A stretch of 63,610 nucleotides of DNA, counting the filler, from Octopus bimaculoides (lineage: Eukaryota), in assembly GCF_001194135.2 (NCBI RefSeq). It is 5 parts of 3 records of this genome, joined end to end, with 100 filler letters (N's around TTAATTAATTAA, not from the genome) between each part and the next. Parts side by side here need not be neighbours in the genome. Positions count along the whole stretch, not along the records: positions 30,920 to 43,489 come from NC_068981.1; 4 more parts are not named here. One strand, written 5' to 3'. Position 1 is the first letter of the stretch. Each line of letters opens with the position of its first letter. A program made the position numbers and the translations under genes. Below, piece after piece: positions 4,051-45,700 of the stretch. Below the pieces are notes generated by a model that saw only the letters and a list, made by a program, of their open reading frames with translations, did not search any database and was not told the DNA's origin.

Positions 4051-4140
4051 CTGCTCAATAGCTCGTTTTAACCACCAATGAGGACCCATCATTGTAATGG
4101 CGCACACTATTTTGGCATGGAGAACTCCAAGAGCCCAATC
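4051..4140 (-). CDS. MARCHF6: MARCHF6 exon DWALGVLHAKIVCAITMMGPHWWLKRAIEQ
   Basis: cag/gtaagt boundaries, 90 nt; DWALGVLHAKI is a MARCH6 hallmark. Confidence 0.96.
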
Positions 4141-4234
4141 CTGGAAACAAAATAATTTCACATAAAAATGGTAAAAAAATATATAAACAACACAATTCCA
4201 GCATCCATGACAGGCAAATCTTATCTGCTATGAT

Positions 4235-4640
4235 CTATGTGTGCTTTTATACACCAAGTGCCTAAAATGAGAGAATCTCTCAGGGGTTCTAACAAGACAT
4301 CCATGTTAAGTTAGATATAAAGATTGCCTTTTGGTACTAATACTGCTTCCATTACAAATAATTACTTAATAAGCAAATTGGCTATTTGCGACATGTCTGA
4401 AAGATGCTGATATCCTATATATTGCAGCAGCAACATCTGACTGGCATGCAGTAACTGCACACTTCCCAGATTATTTCCAATAGAATGAAATCACATAAAA
4501 TTGGAATTCCAGTGCGCACAATGGATGATCCATGTGTGTGCTTTTAAGCACCAAGCGCCTATATAAGAGGATCTCTCAAGGTTAATAATGCAGTATTTGA
4601 TGTTCTAACAAGACATCCATGTCAAGTTGGTTATAAAGAC
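4235..4640 (+). repeat. Diverged local direct duplication (~4235-4325 vs ~4535-4640)
   Basis: Shared TGTGCTTTTA..CACCAAG.GCCTA and GTTCTAACAAGACATCCATGT.AAGTT.G.TATAAAGA blocks. Confidence 0.7.
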
Positions 4641-5799
4641 TACACAATAATTTTATATTTTTGCTCCATTTTTAGATATCTACAGGGGGGAGGGTTAAAA
4701 ATTAACTCACTCCTGTGGGGTAGCTTGTGTTTCAATAAAAACTATTTTTACAACTGAATGCCCATCTATCAATCATTCAACCATGCAGTAGAAATGGAAC
4801 CTGATTTTTACCAATTTGGCAAAGTGAAGCAAGCACAGTTATGTAGGGTCTCTGTCAGTTGATATTGACCATCCATCTGCAAATATATGTGCAAGACTGG
4901 GCAAGATTTTTCTTTTGGGTTTACAGTTACCCATACATGGAAGTTTCCTTTCTTTATGGCATGGAAATTTACCCTGAGAAAGGACAACGTGTTGGACCAA
5001 TGCAGTTTGGCACCAGTATCATTACAGGTACTGATGTCAGAATACAAAGCGTCAGATACAGACACAGTAAGGCATTTTATTTAACCCTCCGTTAATTCAT
5101 CATCAGTGATTAGCACATCTTTTTATCAAACCTGGAAGGATGAAAGGTAAAACTGACCTTAGCAAGATTTGAACTTGCCCTGAAGCAAGCCAAGAAGATT
5201 ATAGCAAGATTTGAACTGTCAATCATGGAATCAGTAATCAAAATACTTTAACTTCACAGCTACTAATTAATATTTTCTGTAATTGTCCCTTTGAAAATAG
5301 TTAAGTATTTAGTACTGCTAGATATTTATTTTACTAACCCACTGAAAATAGAGGTACCCACAGTTAAGTAATGATTTTGTATTTCATTTTATGAATTTCC
5401 CCCCAAAAAGCATTTATATAGAGACCTTCAGTTGGATTACTTCCACTTCAGTGTTTGCAACCAACCACAGTTGCATAATTTCAAATATTACTATTGCAGT
5501 CACTGCATTGCATCTTGCTTTGGGTGTTGGCAGAAGGAAGGGCATCCAGTTATAAAAGCAACTGCTCTAAAGATCCTTCCCATATAAAAACACATATCAC
5601 AAAGTTTAGTGTTCTCATTGTGAATGGATCTCTAAAGATCACTGACTAAGAGGTGTAAGCCATCTCGCCTGCTTTGTCTGCTTAGGAAGCACTCAAGAAG
5701 AAAGAGATTTGGACTCAACACTGCATGTTAACAAACTAAAAGACCCGTTCTAGTGTTCTTGCTGCTTACAACAATAAACTGTATCACTCAAGGTCATCT

Positions 5800-6220
5800 A
5801 TTTACAAGTCGGTGATGCAGCAGGACAGAGAAACAGGGGCCGCCCACAGCTGAGGTACAAGGACATTTGCAGGAGGGACATGAAGGTGCTCAACATAGAC
5901 ATCAACATCTGGGAGGAACTGGTGGCAGACCGCACCAGGTGGAAAAGCACACTTCTCAAACAACTACAGATCGGTGAAGAGAAGCTGTCAGCTGCAACTG
6001 CAGAAAAGCAAGCCCAACATAAGGGATCGACAGCTGACAGACCAGAATCCACACACAGATGTGATCTATGTGACTGAGACTGTTATTCTCGCATTGGTCT
6101 CCATAGCCACAGGAGGTGCTGCACAAGCCAAGCAGCCCAACATAGACAATAAATGGACGGACGTGATACCCATGGTCAGCCATGACCAAAGGTGGCCATT
6201 TAATAGATGCAGCTGAGCAT
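5800..6220 (+). mobile_element. RTE-clade LINE 3' fragment
   Basis: GRPQLRYKDICRRDMKVLNIDINIWEELVADRTRW...CDLCD*DCYSRIGLHSHRRCC matches the RTE ORF2 C-terminus (GRP..RYKD, DR..W, SRIGL.SH). Confidence 0.85.
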
Positions 6221-31731: not shown

Positions 31732-32145
31732 TCCCCTTTCTTTGCACACATACACCACACACAAAATTTATTTTTTCCCTTTTCTTTTTTCATTCATTAC
31801 ACTTTTACAGCCTTCATCATGTAATAATAATTTCCGTGTATAATAACTTATGTTTACATGTGTGCACAAAAATGCATGCTGCGCATTATCCAATGTAATT
31901 GTATATTTATAAACCAGTGCAGATAAACGAAGTTTATGCATCAAATCGCCAGACAGTCGTTGTTACACGAATTCTAAAGCTGCGAACAGAGATATAAATA
32001 TCCAATCGTATTTTATGATGCGTAACATACATATTAGATCAGACATGCAAACATATTTTTTTTTTACACTGAAATTATTATATGACGAAGGCTGCGAAAC
32101 GGCTGCAACCCTAAGGATGACAAGTGGTTAAATAAATATGCTCAC

Positions 32146-32183
32146 CTCTCATACCTCCTGACAGTCACCATATTCCCTTCCAT
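32146..32183 (-). CDS. Candidate MARCHF6 first coding exon (MEGNMVTVRRYE.., or the shorter ATG AGA G from 32152)
   Basis: Strong donor AG|GTGAGC at 32146/32145 in the CpG-richer zone upstream of the gene body; no homology support. Confidence 0.3.
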
Positions 32184-32185
32184 AT

Positions 32186-32262
32186 CGGCTAACACTCTGA
32201 TGAGCGTAAAGTTATATAATCCATTATATTCTTTACGCGAAACTGGTTGGTAAGATTAGCCG
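32186..32262 (+). ncRNA. Type I hammerhead ribozyme, canonical core
   Basis: CGGCTAA-CA-CT (stem I), CTGATGA, GCGTAAAG...CTTTACGC (8-bp stem II), GAAA, CT-GGTT-GG, TA, AG-A-TTAGCCG (stem I'). Every conserved core nucleotide is present; predicted GUA cleavage after 32252. Confidence 0.88.
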
Positions 32263-32349
32263 TGATGAATATTCAATATTCTACATTTCGGATAATATAT
32301 ATATTATACATTCACACTCGCGTACGCACACGCACGCACACGCACACAG

Positions 32350-32380
<31 letters not shown>

Positions 32381-32443
32381 AACACACACACACACGCACA
32401 CACACATACATACACATACACATATATGTATATACATACATAT

Positions 32444-32536
32444 ATGTTTTCGATCTAGTTTGGATTCTTTGCCATCAAATTTGAATTCTTTGCAATCAAA
32501 TTTGATGGCAAAGCATCCAAACCGGATCGAAAACAT
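32444..32536. other. 41-bp-arm hairpin with 11-nt loop (pre-miRNA-like or MITE-like)
   Basis: Arms 32444-32484 and 32496-32536 are reverse complements with 3 differences. Confidence 0.75.
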
Positions 32537-33336
32537 CTATATATGTACACATATTACTAACAGTGATGCAACGGTATCACTTAATCAGATAAGCGTTATC
32601 GGATCGACGTAAGATATTTCAACACAACGGTGTCCCACAACAATTGTTTATAACGGTATATAGTGAGGCACGATATTTAGTTCTACAGCAACAAACGTCT
32701 TCAGAACTGACGTCCCTTAAATTTTCTCCTACGACGTCATCTGAAATCAGAAGTATACTTCAGTCGTTCCAGAACAACTGGTCTACTAAATAAGGTAATT
32801 CTAGCCGATTGTTATAACCGATATTTATGTTACTTTAAGACATTTTCAAAGTCTCTTTAGAATGAAAACGCCTTTCGTATTGATGTTTACCATACTGGGT
32901 ATTTCTGAAAATCTCTGTAAGTAAGATGCTCTTTTTATGGATCCACATATTTGAACCTCTTCGTTTAACCACACATGCCGTAATAGATAAGCAAATACTT
33001 TAAGATACGAATTAAAGTATGATAAAATAAAATAAAAAGTTCTATATTGAATTCTGTGTATAATAATGACTCTTCAGAAAATATGTTCATAGCTAAACAG
33101 TCAGATACAGGCAGGAAACAAGATATTTATCTCTCTCCCTCCCCACCCACTATACCTTCCATTCTATATAAAGCCCATGTAGTCAAATAATCGAATGTCA
33201 AGTATTAGTCGACAAACGTCCTTAAAATTACACACAAACGTCTGCAAAGAAATGATAGATGAAACATAAACGATGAAACGAAAATAATCAGCGTCGAACA
33301 AATCTCTCTCTCTCTCTCTCTCTTTATCTGTCTATA

Positions 33337-33960: not shown

Positions 33961-35062
33961 GGTGGGGCATAATGGGTCATCCACAAATGGAGCAAAACGC
34001 AGAGCAGTATTTGGATAAAATATAGTAAATTGTGGGTGAATGTTGAAAACAATTAATAAAGGAACGTATGAGAGGTGTCCGAAATTAAAGAGACACAATC
34101 TTCATTAAAATAAACAAAACAAAAATCAACTTTGTTTACAAAAACAGTCATTTTGAACGTTAAATCAATCACATTAATTAACTTTCCAACTTAATATGGA
34201 TTCCATTCGGTACACGGAGACCAGATTAAGTTGCACATTCCCGCGAAGAACTCTTGGAATAAACTTTGGACAAATGTCATACAGCAATGAAATTTCGTTG
34301 GTCCTGCCTTTGTCTCGCCTTCAGAATCTCTTGCAGGTAGAGCACTCAGATTCCTCTTCGTCCGATTCATCTGCACTATCATGGTTACCATCACTATGGT
34401 CAGACTCTGCACTACTTTTTTTTTGCCAGTTTGGAGAAAAAGACCCTCCTTCCTCTTCGCTCTTAGACTTTTGTTGCTCCTTTGGTGCATTTTTAAAAAT
34501 CTTTTGCTGCATGTTCGTCTGCTTCAATCTTGAATCTGTTTAAATATCAATAATTACATGAAACAAAGTTGCTAAAACACTTTCAGGTACAGGCACATAT
34601 TTGTAGCATGTGGAAGACTTCTTTAAATCTTCTTTTCTTCTCTTTATAAATACCTATATCCTATATCTTAAGTGACACATTATGATCCACGCTGCAAACT
34701 GACAACTGACGCATTATGCCCCGCTTTTGAATTTTACGGAATTTCAGAATTTCCAAAGATATTTCCTTTATCCAACATAACACAGGCAAAGAAAATACTT
34801 CTAAAATAGTACAAAAATTCCAAATTTGTAATACTTCTTAACGATCAAAAACATGTAGGTTAAGTGAACGATGTCTGTTATCCAGAATGAGGAACTTGAA
34901 GAGGAGACATCAGAGACAATACATCATTTATGTTAGCAGGAGGAATTATGAAATTTATAATGGCTGCTTCATCATACTTCCTGGTTTGAAGTCGGGAGAA
35001 AATGATAAAAATCTGGGAAATGACGCATTATGTCACAAAAACTCATTATATCCCAACCCCAC
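33961..35062 (-). mobile_element. Probable degraded pogo-like DNA transposon remnant
   Basis: GGGGCATAATGGGTCA at 33964 has inverted relatives TGACGCATTATGCCCC (34707) and TGACGCATTATG/CATTATATCCCAACCCC (35021-35060). The minus strand shows an acidic tract followed by CSTC, resembling a decayed PHD-like tail. Confidence 0.4.
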
Positions 35063-35839: not shown

Positions 35840-36579
35840 NNNNNNNNNNNNNNNNNNNNNNNNNNNNNNNNNNNNNNNNNNNNNNNNNNNNNNNNNNNNN
35901 NNNNNNNNNNNNNNNNNNNNNNNNNNNNNNNNNNNNNNNNNNNNNNNNNNNNNNNNNNNNNNNNNNNNNNNNNNNNNNNNNNNNNNNNNNNNNNNNNNNN
36001 NNNNNNNNNNNNNNNNNNNNNNNNNNNNNNNNNNNNNNNNNNNNNNNNNNNNNNNNNNNNNNNNNNNNNNNNNNNNNNNNNNNNNNNNNNNNNNNNNNNN
36101 NNNNNNNNNNNNNNNNNNNNNNNNNNNNNNNNNNNNNNNNNNNNNNNNNNNNNNNNNNNNNNNNNNNNNNNNNNNNNNNNNNNNNNNNNNNNNNNNNNNN
36201 NNNNNNNNNNNNNNNNNNNNNNNNNNNNNNNNNNNNNNNNNNNNNNNNNNNNNNNNNNNNNNNNNNNNNNNNNNNNNNNNNNNNNNNNNNNNNNNNNNNN
36301 NNNNNNNNNNNNNNNNNNNNNNNNNNNNNNNNNNNNNNNNNNNNNNNNNNNNNNNNNNNNNNNNNNNNNNNNNNNNNNNNNNNNNNNNNNNNNNNNNNNN
36401 NNNNNNNNNNNNNNNNNNNNNNNNNNNNNNNNNNNNNNNNNNNNNNNNNNNNNNNNNNNNNNNNNNNNNNNNNNNNNNNNNNNNNNNNNNNNNNNNNNNN
36501 NNNNNNNNNNNNNNNNNNNNNNNNGTTAATAACTATAGGTAGATAGATAGAAAGGTGCACACACAGACACAGACACAGG

Positions 36580-36929: not shown

Positions 36930-37700
36930 CTTGTTTTGACCATCAACTTTTCCCCATTAAACTAAATTCGGCCATATTTTGCTCTAGTTGATTTGGTATG
37001 TATCCAGTTGTTCCAATAATAATAGGTATGAAGCTGAAAGTGTATCATGTGTACTGGTTTTTCCAAACTCCTTATCCATGGTACATATATGCCTTTTTTC
37101 TTATAACATTGCTATACAGAATGTAGGTGGTTTTCACAGCCGAATATATCTTTTCCTTGTGGTCCGATACAACAAACTCTGGCCGGTTGTGTTTTAACTC
37201 GGTGATTGTTTTAATTGTTAAGTCCCACTACTATTCGTTTTCAATATGGTCAACTTCGTTTGCAGGGGATTTCGTTTTTTGCTATATTGTGGCAAACTCT
37301 TCTGGCTACCGTATCATGCCACATGGGAAGATAATATCTGGAAGATATTCTCTCGCATTTGGCAATAATGTGGTTGATGTCTTCAATCTTGGTCTTGCAA
37401 AGCCCACTCGTGTTGTCTGTCAAAGTTTTCTGCCTTTTATGCTGTAGGTACTTGGTGGGGATCTGTGGGTACTTCGTGAGGATCTCTTGTTCTTCGAAGT
37501 GGGATGTCATAAACTTGGCGGTGCTCCATGCCAAGCTTTTGACACAATCCCTTTAATGGTTTGTATTTTACGTGCCAAGTACCAACGTACTGTCTTCTCA
37601 ATGAACTAATCCGTTTTTCTAATTCCGTGTTTCTGATAAATAGATCGCGTAATGTGGGTTGATGTCGACTAACCCATTCATCTTGTCGCTAGCGAAGTGC
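36930..37700 (-). mobile_element. RLE-type (R2/R4/HERO-like) non-LTR retrotransposon 3' fragment
   Basis: Minus strand motifs in order: KPLKG, EQEILTKY, LCKTKIEDINHIIAKC (zinc knuckle), WHDTVARRV (RHD), KHNRPEFVV (PD), FIPIIIGTTG; interrupted by frameshifts. Confidence 0.8.
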
Positions 37701-39460: not shown

Positions 39461-39932
39461 NNNNNNNNNNNNNNNNNNNNNNNNNNNNNNNNNNNNNNNN
39501 NNNNNNNNNNNNNNNNNNNNNNNNNNNNNNNNNNNNNNNNNNNNNNNNNNNNNNNNNNNNNNNNNNNNNNNNNNNNNNNNNNNNNNNNNNNNNNNNNNNN
39601 NNNNNNNNNNNNNNNNNNNNNNNNNNNNNNNNNNNNNNNNNNNNNNNNNNNNNNNNNNNNNNNNNNNNNNNNNNNNNNNNNNNNNNNNNNNNNNNNNNNN
39701 NNNNNNNNNNNNNNNNNNNNNNNNNNNNNNNNNNNNNNNNNNNNNNNNNNNNNNNNNNNNNNNNNNNNNNNNNNNNNNNNNNNNNNNNNNNNNNNNNNNN
39801 NNNNNNNNNNNNNNNNNNNNNNNNNNNNNNNNNNNNNNNNNNNNNNNNNNNNNNNNNNNNNNNNNNNNNNNNNNNNNNNNNNNNNNNNNNNNNNNNNNNN
39901 NNNNNNNNNNNNNNNNNNNNNNNNNNNNNNNN

Positions 39933-39986
<54 letters not shown>

Positions 39987-40998
39987 AGCAAGAAAATGAG
40001 AGAGGTATCTGTGCTGGTTCCCTTGGCTGCACTTTTCCCTATGAAAGACTGCTAACACTAGAACGGATACAAGAATCGATTGACTATGTCTTTTCTCCTA
40101 ATTTCTTCATCAGCCCACCTCCACATTACTGGAACTACTTCTCCACTTTTGAATAAAAATGTTCCCGCTCATCCAGTCCTAAGCTCCTAAACCTCTTTCT
40201 TCCTTCCTTCATACATAAATGCATGCATACATACACATATACACATACAGACATACATATACACACGCACATATTTATATATATACATATATCTCTATAT
40301 ACATACATACGTATATATATATATATATATATGCATATATATATATACATATATATTTATATACATATATATTTATATACATATATACATACCTATATAT
40401 ATATATATACATGTATATATACATATATATATACATACATACACACACNNNNNNNNNNNNNNNNNNNNNNNNNNNNNNNNNNNNNNNNNNNNNNNNNNNN
40501 NNNNNNNNNNNNNNNNNNNNNNNNNNNNNNNNNNNNNNNNNNNNNNNNNNNNNNNNNNNNNNNNNNNNNNNNNNNNNNNNNNNNNNNNNNNNNNNNNNNN
40601 NNNNNNNNNNNNNNNNNNNNNNNNNNNNNNNNNNNNNNNNNNNNNNNNNNNNNNNNNNNNNNNNNNNNNNNNNATATATATATATATATATATAATACAA
40701 ACAATATATGAGTATATGCATATATACGTACATGTATGTATATGTACATACCTACATCTACATGTATATATAGATGCATACCTGTGTACAGGACGTTACA
40801 AAAAACAAAAACAAACGTGGACAAAATGATAAACAGAGTACAGAACACACACAGGCCACATAGAGAACATTTCCTTCATCGGTTGCCACCATTCTAAAAC
40901 TAAGCGTTTCGAAGAGTTAGGGCCCGACGCAAACCAAACGCTAAGGCAAGACAAACATCTCAAGTCACATACGTTATTATTATCGGAAAAATTTTAAA

Positions 40999-41054: not shown

Positions 41055-42187
41055 AAATAGGGAAAATGTGAAGGGTATAGATTATTAAGAAAACGATGAC
41101 ATAGAGGACTGGAGAAAAAGAATAAAGAAAAGAAGAAAATGTAGAAAAAGGAGCATAAAAGTTCACAGTTCAACTTTCCGATAGTGTAGATGTTAGTCCA
41201 GAAGACCTCAGGTGCAATTCTATGCGAATCCATGAATGGTTATATCCTTCATAGTGTAAATATCCAGAGATAAGAGAGTGGTAGCAGAGGTGGCTATTGA
41301 GGGATAAAGAGAAAGAAAAATAGAAAGAGAGAAAGGAATTGGTAGGGAAGCTGGAGATACAGAGAGTGGAGAAGGGATGCAAGGATTGATAGGAAAGATA
41401 AAATAAGGTATATAGGAATATAGTGAAGAAAAATAAACAAGAAGATAAATGAATAAATAATTATATTAGGGTAAATCAGGAGACAGGAGGAGGTAAAGGA
41501 AGATAACGTAAAGAATACAAAATAAAGTAAAATAAAACGGAAGGGATTCAAAAAGAATAGTAGGTGCCAGTGCTGTTCTAGTTTGTAGGGTTGGGGAGGA
41601 AATAAAGTAATGTATTTGTGTCCGTTTTATGGCTAAGGACAGTGGCTATAGAAATATTTTTAGCTATGGGGGTATAAGTGTGTAGGTAGTCGTGAAAGGA
41701 GAAACCAGTTGAATGTTACATTATTTAGGAATAAGAGTTACAACTAAATATTAGGGGATTTAATAGGTTAAGGTCTAAAAATAAATTAAAGAATTAATAG
41801 TTAACCTCTAAGGTTGATTAAAAAAAAATATACAAGGGTATGTATTAACGACCATGGAGGTATGTATGTGAGTGTTATGTGTGAGAGGTAAGTTTTCATT
41901 TGGATTTATGGAGCAATTTTAAAATGCTGAAAAATTTGTGTTTACACGTTGTGAAGGCTTTATTGTTTTTGTTAAGCAATTGTGAGTTCTGGATAAAAGT
42001 TTTGAGGGCTTCTTATCGGCAGAGTCAACAAGTGGAGCCCTGGCCCTGATATGGGATGCCAGAATCTATTATGGCCCAGGATAACCTATATTGGTAATCC
42101 GTTACAGCACTTACCTAGTCGTTTAAGTGACCTGTGAACTAAACCCCCATAATTTGTATATATATATATATATATATATATATTATG

Positions 42188-42562
42188 AAGCAGTTGTATA
42201 CTGTCAACTTAATGTGACAGTCCCAATAAGGGAATCATACTGCTGCTATTTAGCTCTAGGAAGCTGGACCGCTTCCTGTCGGCCTTGACACATTCCCTGT
42301 GTCTTTATATTTGTGAGGGGGAGACAAACACCTCCACCCAGCCTAGTCTGCATTCAGGGACATGTTTCTGAGTCATTGCTCGTCATCAGCCTGAAGTAGC
42401 ACGACCAGCCGGCTGAAGATGCCTGTCAACCTCTCACAAATATAAGGTCACAGGAAATGTGTCAAGGCCAACAGGAAGCGGTCCAGCTTCCTAGGGCTAG
42501 ATAGCCGCAGTATGATTCCCTTATTGGGACTGTCACATTAAGTTGACGGTATACAACTGCTT
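42188..42562. repeat. Inverted repeat, ~133-bp arms (42188-42320 / 42430-42562), 109-bp spacer holding a hammerhead; probable Penelope-like remnant
   Basis: Arms align by eye with about 9-10 substitutions. Confidence 0.85.
42353..42395 (-). ncRNA. Minimal type I hammerhead (Penelope-type, palindromic stem III)
   Basis: Minus strand: TTCAGG CTGATGA cGAGcaatgaCTCa GAAA CATG TC CCTGAA; perfect 6-bp stem I, GUC site, ACATGT palindrome. Confidence 0.75.
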
Positions 42563-42626
42563 TATCGTAACACTGCTGCTTATTTCTCTCTGTGAAATTT
42601 ATAATTAAATCATTTCTAATTTATAC

Positions 42627-42718
<92 letters not shown>

Positions 42719-45700
42719 GTTTGTGTGTGTGTGTATATACACACACATATACACACATATATNNNNNNNNNNNNNNNNNNNNNNNNNNNNNNNNNNNNNN
42801 NNNNNNNNNNNNNNNNNNNNNNNNNNNNNNNNNNNNNNNNNNNNNNNNNNNNNNNNNNNNNNNNNNNNNNNNNNNNNNNNNNNNNNNNNNNNNNNNNNNN
42901 NNNNNNNNNNNNNNNNNNNNNNNNNNNNNNNNNNNNNNNNNNNNNNNNNNNNNNNNNNNNNNNNNNNNNNNNNNNNNNNNNNNNNNNNNNNNNNNNNNNN
43001 NNNNNNNNNNNNNNNNNNNNNNNNNNNNNNNNNNNNNNNNNNNNNNNNNNNNNNNNNNNNNNNNNNNNNNNNNNNNNNNNNNNNNNNNNNNNNNNNNNNN
43101 NNNNNNNNNNNNNNNNNNNNNNNNNNNNNNNNNNNNNNNNNNNNNNNNNNNNNNNNNNNNNNNNNNNCAGACACACACGCACCCCCTCCACACACGCACA
43201 CACACATACACATGCACATACACAAGACACATACACACACATGTAGAAACGAACTCACTTACACACACATGCAAATGAACCTACACATAACTCCTACACA
43301 CACACTCACACACAAACACACCCAGGTGCACATACATGGACATACACGCAAATGAACCCACACATAACTCACATACACACACAACAAACAGTAACACATA
43401 CACGAACACATACTACGCATATACACGCACACACACACACACATTTACCTCCCTCTTACACTCTCCTGTCTTAGAAAGAACTTTTCCTCNNNNNNNNNNN
43501 NNNNNNNNNNNNNNNNNNNNNNNNNNNNNNNNNTTAATTAATTAANNNNNNNNNNNNNNNNNNNNNNNNNNNNNNNNNNNNNNNNNNNNTCAGAAAGAAA
43601 TTCACGGAGAATAATACTTAAATCTATGCATACAAGCTGCTAATTTCATTCTTTTGCAGAAACCTATATTGCCTTTGGCAAATTTTTAAATATTCTCAGT
43701 TCCACGGCAAGCCACGAGTAGGAATCTATCCGATTCTATTCTGTAATTAACACACGTTGTTGCATCAAAGAGCAGGTGATGTACAGTAATATATATATCA
43801 AAAGGATGTGTTATAACACTATTCCACATATACAAAAACAGCCATACCAACAATCCAACGTACCCCCATCATCAGCTGCCCCACGGATATCATTATGGTT
43901 TCTTTTATTCTTTTATTCGTTTCAGTCATTTCACTGCGACCATGCTGGAGCACCGCTTTGAGTCGAAAACATCGACCTCAGTACTTATTTTTTGTAAGCC
44001 TAGTACTTATTCTATCTGTTTCTTTTGCCGAACCGTTAAGTTACAGGGACGTAAACGCAGCAGCATCGGTTGTCAAGTGATGATGAGGGGACAAACACAG
44101 ACACACNNNNNNNNNNNNNNNNNNNNNNNNNNNNNNNNNNNNNNNNNNNNNNNNNNNNNNNNNNNNNNNNNNNNNNNNNNNNNNNNNNNNNNNNNNNNNN
44201 NNNNNNNNNNNNNNNNNNNNNNNNNNNNNNNNNNNNNNNNNNNNNNNNNNNNNNNNNNNNNNNNNNNNNNNNNNNNNNNNNNNNNNNNNNNNNNNNNNNN
44301 NNNNNNNNNNNNNNNNNNNNNNNNNNNNNNNNNNNNNNNNNNNNNNTATATATATATATATATATATTCGATAGGCTTCTTTCAGTTTCCGCCTACCAAA
44401 TCCACTCACAAGGCTTTGATTGGCCCGAGGCTACGGTAGAAGACTATAATAGAAGACACTCGCCCAAGGTGCTATGGAATGGGAGTGAACTCGAAACCAT
44501 GTGCTTGGGAAGTAAGCTTCTGACCACATAGCCACGCATGCACCTAGCTACATATACATATATGCACGTACATTTTCAATTGCACGATTTTTACAGGAAA
44601 AAGAAAAATAATAACAAAAGAAAAGGCCAATAAAATATAACAGAAAGACCGAAATTTTTCGGTCTGAATACATACAACATAATATACATATGCACATACG
44701 TAAAAAACACAGTGAAAAATATATATGCACACATCTACACGCTCACATATACACACACAACATAAAACACATATAGAGAAGAGAGAATGATGGAGGTGAG
44801 AGAATTACGGATGAGGCGGTGGTGGAGGCGTGGGGTACGATTACGCAGGATGGAGGTTTGATGTCAAGGCGGAGAAATGAAACGGAGCATATCGTGTGTC
44901 CTAACGTTGATTTTCATTATATAGTCTTTCTCCCCCACTACTTCTTTTCTTTTTTTCTCTTCTGTCTCTGTATTTTCTTTTTTTTTTTTGCAAAGTAAGC
45001 CTTAACCATTTGCAACGTCCACATCCAGCAACAAACAAACAAACAAACAAACAACACTGCCACAGACACCACCACCACCAGTGTAATCTCCCTCGTCTTC
45101 TTCTTTTTCATCCATCCTCTCATCATCATCATCATTATCAATATACTGTTTGCAATGACGAGGAGGAAGAAACGGAAGATGCAGCTGGTCAGATGCGTGA
45201 TTATCGGCAGCCATATTTCTATGGAACGTTCGTACGTCTGTAGTCGAAACAAAGCCAACAGCCGCCATTACAAAAAGATGCAAGCTAAGGAAATGAGACA
45301 AGATGGCCACTCAGTTCCTGCTGTCTTATTCTTTTTGCTTTATTTACTTGATTGAGTTTTCTTTTATTTGGTTTTTGCGTTCTTTTCCCATTCTCGTTTT
45401 GTGTTTTTACTATTTTATTTATTTTGAGTTTTTGTTATTCGTTTTCTGCTTTCGTTCCTTTAAGAATATGTTTTCTCTTTCCCCTCCGTCTCACTGTATA
45501 TTTCTCTACATCTGTCTGTCTGTCACTCTCTAAGGATGTGTGGATGTGTCTCACTGTCTATGTGTAACCCCTAGTCTCTTTCTCCGTCTGTCGCTCTCTA
45601 TACAAAACACACACACACACTTACATACTTACTCACACACACTATACACACATGCATTCGTATGTGTACGTGTGGGAATATAAATATACATGTATAAATG

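What the first reader, a model, noticed from the sequence alone, without database searches (positions are those of the whole stretch)
32186..32262. Intact canonical hammerhead ribozyme at the 5' end of MARCHF6, antisense strand
Seen: CTGATGA (32197-32203); a perfect 8-bp stem II GCGTAAAG/CTTTACGC with the G10.1-C11.1 pair and a further AT-rich extension; GAAAC...GTA with a short stem III; a stem I of 2 bp + small internal loop + 7 bp (CGGCTAA/TTAGCCG). Established: this is the full type I hammerhead consensus, with GUA cleavage predicted after 32252. It differs from the Penelope-type minimal motifs elsewhere in the window, has no substitutions in the core, and I see no tandem partner or element ends around it. 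Inference: a solitary, possibly domesticated ribozyme that cuts +strand RNA overlapping the MARCHF6 promoter/5' UTR. Cutting requires a +strand transcript starting left of 32186, which the sequence alone cannot show.
Basis: partly seen in the sequence, partly recalled or inferred. Interest (0 to 1): 0.85.

Follow-up and report, generated by a model that had tools for sequence, protein, structure and literature searches.

The report
Hammerhead ribozyme inside a dispersed repeat
A complete hammerhead self-cleaving RNA motif really is at this spot, but it is one ageing copy of a repeat present hundreds of times in this genome and its relatives, not a lone ribozyme recruited by a host gene.

Summary
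The motif is real. 32186-32262 (+) carries every invariant hammerhead nucleotide, three helices in type I topology, and a GUA site that predicts cleavage after A32252. My descriptor finds nothing as good in 32.5 Mb of shuffled sequence.

It is not solitary. It lies in a repeat block of about 260 bp (about 32040-32299). Single-copy flanks have read depth 19, 8 and 16 in three species. The ribozyme half has summed depth of thousands, about 100-300 copy equivalents in each species. Other copies also carry CUGAUGAG and helix II.

The window copy differs from the family majority:
- about 6% substitutions;
- a 19-nt shorter helix II tip;
- two extra bases in helix I;
- two helix III changes that favour a competing fold;
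- truncation at 32299, next to a TA/CA microsatellite.

The insertion is shared with a sister species, and it diverged there at about the same rate as the flank. No RNA read fits this locus. Family RNA is sparse and shows no pile of ends at the cleavage site. The piece holds no MARCHF6 sequence. No Rfam hammerhead model matches.

Best reading: a decaying fragment of a hammerhead-bearing retroelement family of the Penelope-like or retrozyme kind. This is a new member of a known kind, of low interest.

The parts
32040..32299 (+). Block of interspersed-repeat DNA: a fragment of a longer family element, truncated on both sides, that contains the hammerhead
   Evidence: Read and contig depth rises from single-copy level (19.2 / 8.1 / 16.4) to hundreds or thousands between about 32058 and 32300 in three species. 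The inverted-repeat alignment extends homology left to 32040. Other copies run on past 32299 as CCCACTCTACTGACAGATATACGAGTGCAT, and upstream of 32074 as ...AATAAAAATAATTTATTATACACTGAAATT.
32065..32162 (+). Left module of the repeat ('module A'). It is the most abundant part. Many copies leave the window sequence at 32162.
   Evidence: Summed contig depth reaches 9892 against 19.2 in the flank, about 500 copy equivalents in organism A and up to about 940 in organism C. Loose ends at 32161-32163 read TTTTTATGGTTTATATA... in all runs.
32186..32196 (+). Hammerhead helix I, 5' strand (7 bp, a 2-nt loop side, then 2 bp)
   Evidence: Sequence and descriptor. Most family copies lack 2 nt here.
32197..32203 (+). 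Core C3-A9, CUGAUGA
   Evidence: This is the majority state in the family. Minority variants in three DNA runs: C3>U about 6%, G5>A about 12%, G8>C about 7%.
32204..32238 (+). Helix II: 8 perfect bp (G10.1-C11.1 at its base) plus an AU-rich distal hairpin. The tip is 19 nt shorter than in most family copies.
   Evidence: The loose end after 32221, GGATTGTTACCTAACACTCCATTGTATTCT, rejoins the window sequence at CCATTGTATTCT.
32239..32242 (+). Core G12 A13 A14 and A15.1 (GAAA)
   Evidence: G12>A is seen in about 8% of family reads.
32242..32251 (+). Helix III: A-U, C-G, U.G, loop GGUU. The family majority is ACCGAUUGGU, which is nearly self-complementary.
   Evidence: 32244 T>C in 68-78% and 32246 G>A in about 86% of family reads. 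Predicted self-duplex: -14.4 kcal/mol for the majority sequence, -7.2 for the window copy.
32252..32253 (+). Predicted cleavage site, between A17 (32252) and A1.1 (32253)
   Evidence: Position follows from the hammerhead consensus (established knowledge). No pile of RNA read ends here.
32253..32262 (+). Helix I, 3' strand
   Evidence: Family variants 32261 C>T and 32262 G>A occur at frequencies similar to those of their partners 32187 G>A and 32186 C>T.
31808..31864 (-). Inverted partial copy of the left end of the same repeat (about 80% identical to 32040-32094), separated from it by about 175 nt of single-copy DNA
   Evidence: Local alignment and blastn. 'Opposite strands' joints between 31850-31883 and 32074-32087 in contigs of other copies, and raised depth over 31866-31929.
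32300..32427 (.). TA/CA microsatellite that abuts the truncated right end of the repeat
   Evidence: Family depth falls to 0 by 32304-32312.

Best explanation
The hammerhead at 32186-32262 is one old, truncated copy of an interspersed repeat family whose founder carried a type I hammerhead ribozyme.

The family most likely belongs to the lineage of Penelope-like elements (their flanking repeats, pLTRs) and their non-autonomous derivatives, the non-LTR retrozymes. In that lineage the ribozyme cuts element transcripts to unit length, leaving 5'-OH and 2',3'-cyclic phosphate ends, possibly as a dimer formed through the nearly palindromic helix III.

This copy keeps the whole catalytic core. If a + strand RNA ever ran through it, it could in principle cut itself between A32252 and A32253. 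That would probably be slow. Helix II is very long, so the usual loop 1-loop 2 contact is unlikely, and a competing fold is predicted.

Nothing indicates that this locus is transcribed, selected, or used by a host gene.

Shown:
- the motif and its non-chance nature;
- the multi-copy family in three species;
- the private changes and truncation of this copy;
- the shared insertion in a sister species;
- the absence of RNA reads specific to this locus.

Inferred:
- the class of the carrier element;
- catalytic competence;
- the dimer mode.
For: Motif:
- Complete consensus.
- 0 equally good hits in 32.5 Mb of shuffles.

Family:
- At 95% likeness, all 25 DNA reads fit only partly, cover only 32074-32233, and run on as TCTGATGAGCATAAGGTTATATAAT....
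- At 80% likeness, 368-394 DNA reads per run were laid from less than 1x coverage, against 0-1 in the flank.
- Summed contig depth over 32186-32217 is 5738-6212 against 19.2 (organism A), 1002-1166 against 8.1 (B) and 4057-4640 against 16.4 (C).
- The family majority keeps CUGAUGA, GAAA and U16.1-A17.
- Paired positions vary at matching frequencies. 32186 C>T is 17% and 32262 G>A is 22%. 32187 G>A is 36% and 32261 C>T is 20%.

Decay of this copy:
- 8 substitutions against the majority in 136 nt, a 19-nt deletion, a 2-nt insertion, and a truncated right end.
- The ribozyme fold is 4.1 kcal/mol above the MFE, against 1.7-2.1 for the reconstructed majority.

No constraint:
- The organism B ortholog contig spans 31903-32256 with 22 substitutions. 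Six of them fall in the 93 nt of the ribozyme module, and about 10-11 in 130 nt of flank.

No use:
- 0 RNA reads specific to this locus.
- Family RNA reads number 49-90 per run, against 184 DNA reads for the same amount of sequence. They have few distinct starts and show no end pile at 32252/3.

Class:
- Published Penelope-element hammerheads have a large helix II (6-8 bp).
- A variant group of them has a small palindromic helix III.
- Most occur as widespread single motifs thought to come from truncated elements.
- Some occur as pairs on opposite strands 100-700 bp apart (PMC4209133).
- Penelope-like elements show inverted truncated copies and a bias for microsatellite targets (PMC8557442).
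- Here there is an inverted partial copy 175 nt away and a TA/CA microsatellite at the right end.
Against: - No hammerhead family of Rfam 15 matches, even at E<=10 on 151 nt. Membership therefore rests on the consensus descriptor, not on a curated model.
- No reverse transcriptase or GIY-YIG reading frame, pLTR pair or tandem partner lies next to this copy. I could not obtain other copies with their flanks. The Penelope/retrozyme assignment therefore rests on resemblance.
- The left module is more abundant than the ribozyme module and often continues differently after 32162. The family may be a composite.
- Core positions are not better conserved than other positions among genomic copies: 5 of 15 core or closing-pair positions vary at 4% or more, against 12 of 72 others. 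Selection on the ribozyme is visible only in the majority state.
- The insertion is retained in two species, which by itself does not exclude use.
- Each RNA run was sampled at only about 6%, from unknown tissues.
Confidence: 0.75

Rival explanations
1. One reading: a solitary hammerhead co-opted by the host. It would cut a + strand (promoter-upstream or antisense) RNA near the 5' end of a gene and so shape that gene's expression.
For: - The core is intact.
- The insertion is kept at the same site in organisms A and B.
- Short unspliced contigs from two runs (one labelled 'RNA?', one of unknown kind) cover 32680-32970, about 420-700 bp to the right. This could mark a promoter-like or weakly transcribed spot.
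Against: - Hundreds of paralogous copies exist.
- Divergence from the ortholog equals the flank rate.
- Private helix III changes and a helix II deletion weaken the fold.
- The copy is truncated at 32299.
- No RNA read fits the locus at 95% likeness in three runs, and none lies on 32556-33285 in two runs.
- No MARCHF6 or other coding exon was found in the piece.
Confidence: 0.05
2. The carrier is not of the Penelope/retrozyme lineage. It is another kind of repeat that happens to carry a hammerhead: a SINE-like element (as Sm-alpha of Schistosoma) or a foldback/MITE-like DNA element.
For: - The copies are short, dispersed and abundant.
- The left module also occurs without the ribozyme module.
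- A T-run lies at 32056-32067.
- An inverted 57-nt repeat pair, 31808-31864 / 32040-32094, could be read as terminal inverted repeats.
Against: - No tRNA-like head, no A box, and only a 2-mismatch B-box-like site on the other strand.
- Family homology runs past both putative ends, so the inverted pair does not bound the element.
- The architecture of the ribozyme (large helix II, small near-palindromic helix III) is the one described for Penelope-associated variants (PMC4209133).
Confidence: 0.15
3. The motif is a chance match to the hammerhead consensus.
For: No Rfam hammerhead model reports it.
Against: - 0.0013 relaxed matches are expected per piece, and none as good in 32.5 Mb of shuffles.
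- The same motif is shared by the majority of hundreds of related copies in three species.
Confidence: 0.005

Closest known systems
Hammerhead variants in the flanking repeats (pLTRs) of Penelope-like elements (Cervera & de la Pena 2014, PMC4209133)
   Same: - Type I topology and a large helix II (8 bp here, 6-8 bp there).
- A small, nearly palindromic helix III that could extend into a dimer.
- Mostly found as single dispersed motifs attributed to truncated elements.
- Pairs of element pieces on opposite strands a few hundred bp apart.
- A neighbouring microsatellite (target bias described in PMC8557442).
   Different: - No reverse transcriptase/endonuclease frame or pLTR pair was seen here or could be checked in other copies.
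- Helix I is long (9 bp with an internal loop), not 4-5 bp or 2 bp.
- Helix II carries a further distal arm: 19 nt between the 8-bp strands here, about 38 nt in the family majority.
- Helix III is a real 3-bp stem with a tetraloop, unlike the 'minimal' motifs.
Non-LTR retrozymes of animals (Cervera & de la Pena 2020, PMC7229834; Li et al. 2026 preprint, doi 10.64898/2026.07.22.740005)
   Same: - Type I hammerhead with a helix III of 2-3 bp and a tetraloop, as described for invertebrates.
- Low G+C and non-coding.
- Many copies, including solo monomers spread over the genome.
- No recognisable canonical loop 1-loop 2 contact, as in the mussel ribozymes.
   Different: - Retrozymes are defined by head-to-tail repeats of about 170-400 bp and abundant circular RNA.
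- There is no tandem partner here.
- Family RNA is rarer than family DNA per base sequenced.
- The unit length of the family is unknown.
Sm-alpha SINE hammerhead of Schistosoma (Ferbeyre et al. 1998; from my own knowledge and as cited in PMC4209133)
   Same: A type I hammerhead carried by a short, highly repeated, dispersed element.
   Different: Sm-alpha has a tRNA-like pol III head, a 4-bp helix II and conserved loop-loop contacts. No tRNA-like part or A/B boxes are found here, and helix II is long.
Conserved intronic hammerheads of amniotes (HH9, HH10; de la Pena & Garcia-Robles 2010, as cited in PMC4209133)
   Same: A single hammerhead at a fixed genomic site shared between species.
   Different: Those are single-copy, ultraconserved and sit in the sense strand of introns. 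This one has hundreds of paralogs, evolves like its flank and shows no transcript.

Membership tests
Hammerhead ribozyme, type I | Invariant core: C3 U4 G5 A6 N7 G8 A9, G12 A13 A14, A15.1-U16.1, H17 not G | tested here: met
   CUGAUGA 32197-32203, GAA 32239-32241, A32242-U32251, A32252.
Hammerhead ribozyme, type I | Three helices around the core, with helices II and III closed by loops and helix I open | tested here: met
   Helix I 2+7 bp, helix II 8 bp plus a distal hairpin, helix III 3 bp with a tetraloop. The constrained ribozyme fold is -18.2 kcal/mol, against an MFE of -22.3.
Hammerhead ribozyme, type I | Match to a curated covariance model (the Rfam hammerhead families) | tested here: not met
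   No hammerhead family is listed at E<=10 on 12.6 kb or on 151 nt. The likely cause is the 35-nt helix II arm, but I could not test this. This is a detection test, not a defining property of the ribozyme.
Hammerhead ribozyme, type I | Tertiary contact between loop 1 (or a helix I bulge) and loop 2, which gives fast cleavage at physiological Mg2+ | tested here: inconclusive
   Canonical animal motifs have a helix I of 6 bp and a helix II of 4 bp (PMC4209133). Here helix II is 8 bp plus an arm, and the helix I loop sits 2 bp from the core. The canonical contact looks unlikely, but no 3D test is possible.
Hammerhead ribozyme, type I | Site-specific self-cleavage that depends on Mg2+ | not testable with these tools
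   The only proxy is RNA read ends. There is no pile at 32252/32253 among family reads.
Penelope-like element pLTR hammerhead | Ribozyme lies in direct repeats that flank a reverse transcriptase + GIY-YIG reading frame | tested here: not met
   No such frame lies near this copy. The only RT-related trace is a weak zf-RVT hit 5 kb away. Other copies could not be fetched. Truncated solo copies are the rule for this class (PMC4209133), so this does not exclude descent.
Penelope-like element pLTR hammerhead | Large helix II and a small or absent, palindromic helix III that allows a dimeric active form | tested here: met
   Helix II is 8 bp. The family-majority helix III, ACCGAUUGGU, is predicted to self-pair over 10 bp at -14.4 kcal/mol. 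In the window copy this is weakened to -7.2.
Penelope-like element pLTR hammerhead | Insertion pattern: inverted truncated copy nearby, microsatellite targets | tested here: inconclusive
   An inverted partial copy lies at 31808-31864 and a TA/CA repeat starts at 32300. However, the inverted copy is 175 nt away, not adjacent, and microsatellites are everywhere in this piece.
Non-LTR retrozyme | Head-to-tail tandem repeats, one hammerhead per unit | tested here: not met
   One hammerhead in 12.6 kb. No 'goes back' joints were seen in reads or contigs. Solo monomers are known (doi 10.64898/2026.07.22.740005), and arrays elsewhere in the genome could not be checked.
Non-LTR retrozyme | Abundant unit-length circular RNA | tested here: inconclusive
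   Family RNA reads are 2-4 times rarer than family DNA reads per base sequenced, with few distinct starts. Standard libraries cannot show circles.
Domesticated (host-conserved) hammerhead | Single-copy, transcribed in the sense that forms the ribozyme, and conserved beyond the neutral rate at orthologous sites | tested here: not met
   Hundreds of copies. 0 RNA reads specific to this locus. 6.5% divergence in the ribozyme module against about 8% in the flank.

The most novel reading that the evidence does not exclude
This copy has been kept at the same site in at least two species. It lies about 420-700 bp from a spot (32680-32970) that is picked up by two runs of unclear library type. It may have been co-opted to terminate or process a promoter-upstream or antisense transcript of a neighbouring gene by self-cleavage. 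Separately, the family may be a structurally unusual hammerhead (8-bp helix II with a long distal arm) that current Rfam models do not detect.
Probability: 0.04. Interest if true: 0.6.

Novelty: new member of a known kind. Interest (0 to 1): 0.2.

Why it matters
Type I hammerheads carried by Penelope-like elements and retrozymes are already known to litter invertebrate genomes, so one more family adds little in principle. Three points are useful:

- The family is a hammerhead with an unusually long helix II arm that the Rfam models miss. Annotation pipelines that rely on those models would overlook it.
- An intact core in a single copy is not evidence of domestication. At this copy's level of decay it is expected nearly half the time.
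- My two full-text searches pairing 'hammerhead' with 'octopus' or 'mollusc' found no description of such a family in this group. A proper family description would fill a small gap.

Tried and rejected
- **Rfam cmscan** on the piece and on 151 nt around the motif gave no hammerhead hit. The only overlap is a chance-level snoRNA match of 21 bits.
All later calls were kept between the repeats.
- **Fetching other family copies** failed two ways. Translating a stop-free frame across the element (32086-32250) and searching the protein database found nothing. An exact-pattern scan of metagenome contigs gave two unrelated chance matches, L001 and L002, with no GAAA or helices. Viral contigs gave none.
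- **The look-up of encoding contigs** for the ORF at 34196-34543 returned nothing on record.
- **tRNA-like head and pol III boxes**: none found.
- **Other copies within the piece**: none, apart from the inverted 57-nt fragment.
- **Substitutions in the organism B ortholog**: the output named only one of the six (32226 A>C). Whether its core is intact remains open.
- **Organism C ortholog**: the contig stops at 32035, where the repeat starts.

Full report
**1. The observation**

- Helix I has 7 bp (C32186-G32262 through A32192-U32256). It then has a small internal loop (C32193, A32194 opposite A32255) and two more pairs next to the core (C32195-G32254, U32196-A32253).
- CUGAUGA lies at 32197-32203.
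- Helix II is a perfect 8-bp stem (32204-32211 with 32231-32238). G10.1-C11.1 sits at its base, and an AU-rich distal hairpin extends it.
- G12 A13 A14 lie at 32239-32241.
- Helix III is A32242-U32251, C32243-G32250 and U32244.G32249, closed by GGUU.
- H17 is A32252.

The order of the parts gives type I topology. The predicted cut lies between 32252 and 32253.

The motif is not chance. CTGATGA-N(6-36)-GAAA alone is expected 0.27 times in the window. A full descriptor that I wrote finds only this site in the piece. In 1500 dinucleotide-preserving shuffles (32.5 Mb, both strands) it gave two relaxed hits and none with helices as good.

One test was negative. Rfam 15 reports no hammerhead family here at E<=10, either on the whole piece or on 151 nt. 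I attribute this to the 35-nt helix II arm, which is far longer than in the seed sequences, but I could not test that.

**2. It is not solitary**

Public reads were laid on 31850-32312.

At 95% likeness, a DNA run sampled at less than 1x coverage gave 25 reads. All fitted only in part, all lay between 32074 and 32233, and none lay on the flanks. Their unmatched ends read TCTGATGAGCATAAGGTTATATAAT..., which is another version of the same core and helix II.

At 80% likeness, 368-394 DNA reads per run were laid, against 0-1 on the flank.

Assembled contigs of three coded species gave the depths below. Copy equivalents are depth divided by flank depth (my arithmetic).

| Species | Single-copy flank | Depth over 32186-32217 | Copy equivalents | Copy equivalents over 32234-32297 |
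|---|---|---|---|---|
| A | 19.2 | 5738-6212 | about 300 | 85-146 |
| B | 8.1 | 1002-1166 | about 125-145 | 36-53 |
| C | 16.4 | 4057-4640 | about 250-280 | 92-159 |

The lower figures over 32234-32297 are underestimates, because an indel splits the alignments there.

The left part of the block (32065-32162) is even more abundant, with up to about 500 copy equivalents in A and about 940 in C. Many copies leave the window sequence at 32162 (TTTTTATGGTTTATATA...), so the family may be modular.

**3. Anatomy of the block and of this copy**

The depth profile and the loose ends bound the repeat at about 32040/32058 on the left and 32299 on the right.

- Other copies continue beyond both ends, with left consensus ...AATAAAAATAATTTATTATACACTGAAATT and right consensus CCCACTCTACTGACAGATATACGAGTGCAT. 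Neither continuation is present in the piece. The window copy is therefore a fragment of a longer element. Its right end abuts a TA/CA microsatellite.
- An inverted partial copy of the left end lies at 31808-31864. It is about 80% identical to 32040-32094, with 175 nt of single-copy DNA between them.

Against the family majority, the window copy differs as follows.

- Eight substitutions in 32164-32299, about 6%: 32226, 32244, 32246, 32257, 32268, 32274, 32279, 32281.
- Two extra bases (AC) in helix I that most copies lack.
- A helix II tip that is 19 nt shorter.

None of these changes touches the core. At 6% divergence, the chance that 13 core positions all escape change is about 0.45 (my arithmetic). 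The intact core therefore carries no message.

The two helix III changes (C>U at 32244, A>G at 32246) create a competitor pairing with CUGAU. The ribozyme fold is 4.1 kcal/mol above the minimum free energy for the window copy. It is 1.7-2.1 kcal/mol above it for my reconstruction of the family majority. That reconstruction uses 30-nt loose-end consensus sequences and is approximate.

**4. The ribozyme in the family**

The majority state of every core position is the active one.

Pooled over three DNA runs, minority variants reach these levels:

| Position | Change | Share of reads |
|---|---|---|
| C3 | >U | about 6% |
| G5 | >A | about 12% |
| G8 | >C | about 7% |
| C11.1 | >U | about 11% |
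| G12 | >A | about 8% |

Core positions are thus no better conserved among genomic copies than other positions. That is expected for dead copies of a retroelement whose master copies alone are under selection.

Some helix positions vary at frequencies that match their partners.

- 32186 C>T is 17% and 32262 G>A is 22%.
- 32187 G>A is 36% and 32261 C>T is 20%.
- 32210 A>G and 32232 T>C also match.

This hints at compensatory change. The tool does not link variants within reads, so it is only a hint.

The majority helix III, ACCGAUUGGU, is nearly self-complementary, with a predicted self-duplex of -14.4 kcal/mol. This is the feature that lets animal type I and Penelope-associated hammerheads act as dimers (PMC4209133).

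**5. Selection and use at this locus**

A 352-nt contig of organism B, at single-copy depth 8.1, runs from the unique flank (31903) into the element up to 32256. It has 22 substitutions and 2 gaps. The insertion therefore predates the split of A and B.

Six of those substitutions fall in the 93 nt of the ribozyme module, which is 6.5%. About 10-11 fall in 130 nt of flank, about 8%. I see no constraint. The tool named only one of the six positions (32226), so I cannot say whether the core of B is intact. The contig of organism C stops at the edge of the repeat.

RNA evidence is as follows.

- In three RNA-seq runs, each sampled at about 6% (about 12 million reads), no read fits this locus at 95% likeness. 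The few partial ones come from paralogs.
- No raw RNA read lies on 32556-33285 in two of those runs.
- Family-derived RNA reads number 49-90 per run, against 184 DNA reads for the same amount of sequence. They occur in both mate orientations, have few distinct starts, and show no pile of ends at 32252/32253.

**6. Gene context**

The piece is mostly microsatellites, assembly gaps and repeat debris.

**7. What it is**

The best reading is a decaying fragment of a hammerhead-bearing retroelement family. Several features match published descriptions.

- Penelope-like-element hammerheads have a large helix II.
- A variant group of them has a small palindromic helix III.
- Most occur as single dispersed motifs attributed to truncated elements.
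- Some occur as pairs on opposite strands 100-700 bp apart (PMC4209133).
- The insertion habits of those elements include inverted truncated copies and microsatellite targets (PMC8557442).
- Animal non-LTR retrozymes carry type I hammerheads with a helix III of 2-3 bp and a tetraloop (PMC7229834). They are now argued to derive from Penelope pLTRs and occur in part as solo monomers (doi 10.64898/2026.07.22.740005).

I could not test the defining genomic features of either class (a flanking reverse transcriptase/endonuclease frame, or tandem units), because no other copies could be fetched. The class assignment is therefore an inference. A SINE-like carrier finds no support, since there is no tRNA-like head or pol III boxes.

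**8. Verdict**

The finding is a new member of a known kind, of low interest.

One point is worth a note for annotators. This family's long helix II arm hides it from the Rfam models.

Noticed in passing
window 32428-32551: A near-perfect hairpin palindrome of about 124 nt (arms ...TTTTCGATCTAGTTTGGATTCTTTGCCATCAAATTTGA... and its complement), flanked by TA-rich repeats. It is MITE- or foldback-like. It draws sub-threshold miRNA and sRNA hits in Rfam (MIR4208 at 48.6 bits against a gathering score of 140).
   Followed up: no
window 42185-42342 and 42408-42565: An inverted repeat with 158-nt arms, 89% complementary, 65 nt apart. This is another foldback/MITE-like structure.
   Followed up: no
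window 32680-32970: Short unspliced contigs from run X13 (library kind unknown, 291 nt, depth 8.2) and run X14 (labelled 'RNA?', 244 nt, depth 3.8) cover just this stretch. Two deep RNA-seq runs have no read on 32556-33285. It may be an accessible or promoter-like spot or a weak transcript, about 420-700 bp right of the ribozyme.
   Followed up: partly
window 37250-37534 (- strand): A 94-aa ORF with a weak match to the zinc-binding C-terminal module of reverse transcriptases (zf-RVT, E=0.004, below the Pfam cut-off). It is probably a LINE remnant and is unrelated to the hammerhead block.
   Followed up: no
window 35840-36524, 39461-39932, 40449-40673, 42763-43167: Four assembly gaps (runs of N), each bordered by CA/TA/GA microsatellites. 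1787 of the 12570 bases in the piece are N.
   Followed up: no
window 32065-32162: The left module of the repeat is 2-3 times more abundant than the ribozyme module. In many copies it continues as TTTTTATGGTTTATATA... after 32162. Contigs of other copies show 'opposite strands' joints around 32076-32122, which suggests palindromic rearrangements of this module elsewhere.
   Followed up: partly
L001 1762-1785 and L002 413-436: Two contigs from one metagenome share the 24-nt pattern CTGATGAGTATAAAGTTATATAAT, but nothing else of the hammerhead or the repeat. They are chance matches in an unrelated organism, and the two contigs are near-identical to each other.
   Followed up: yes
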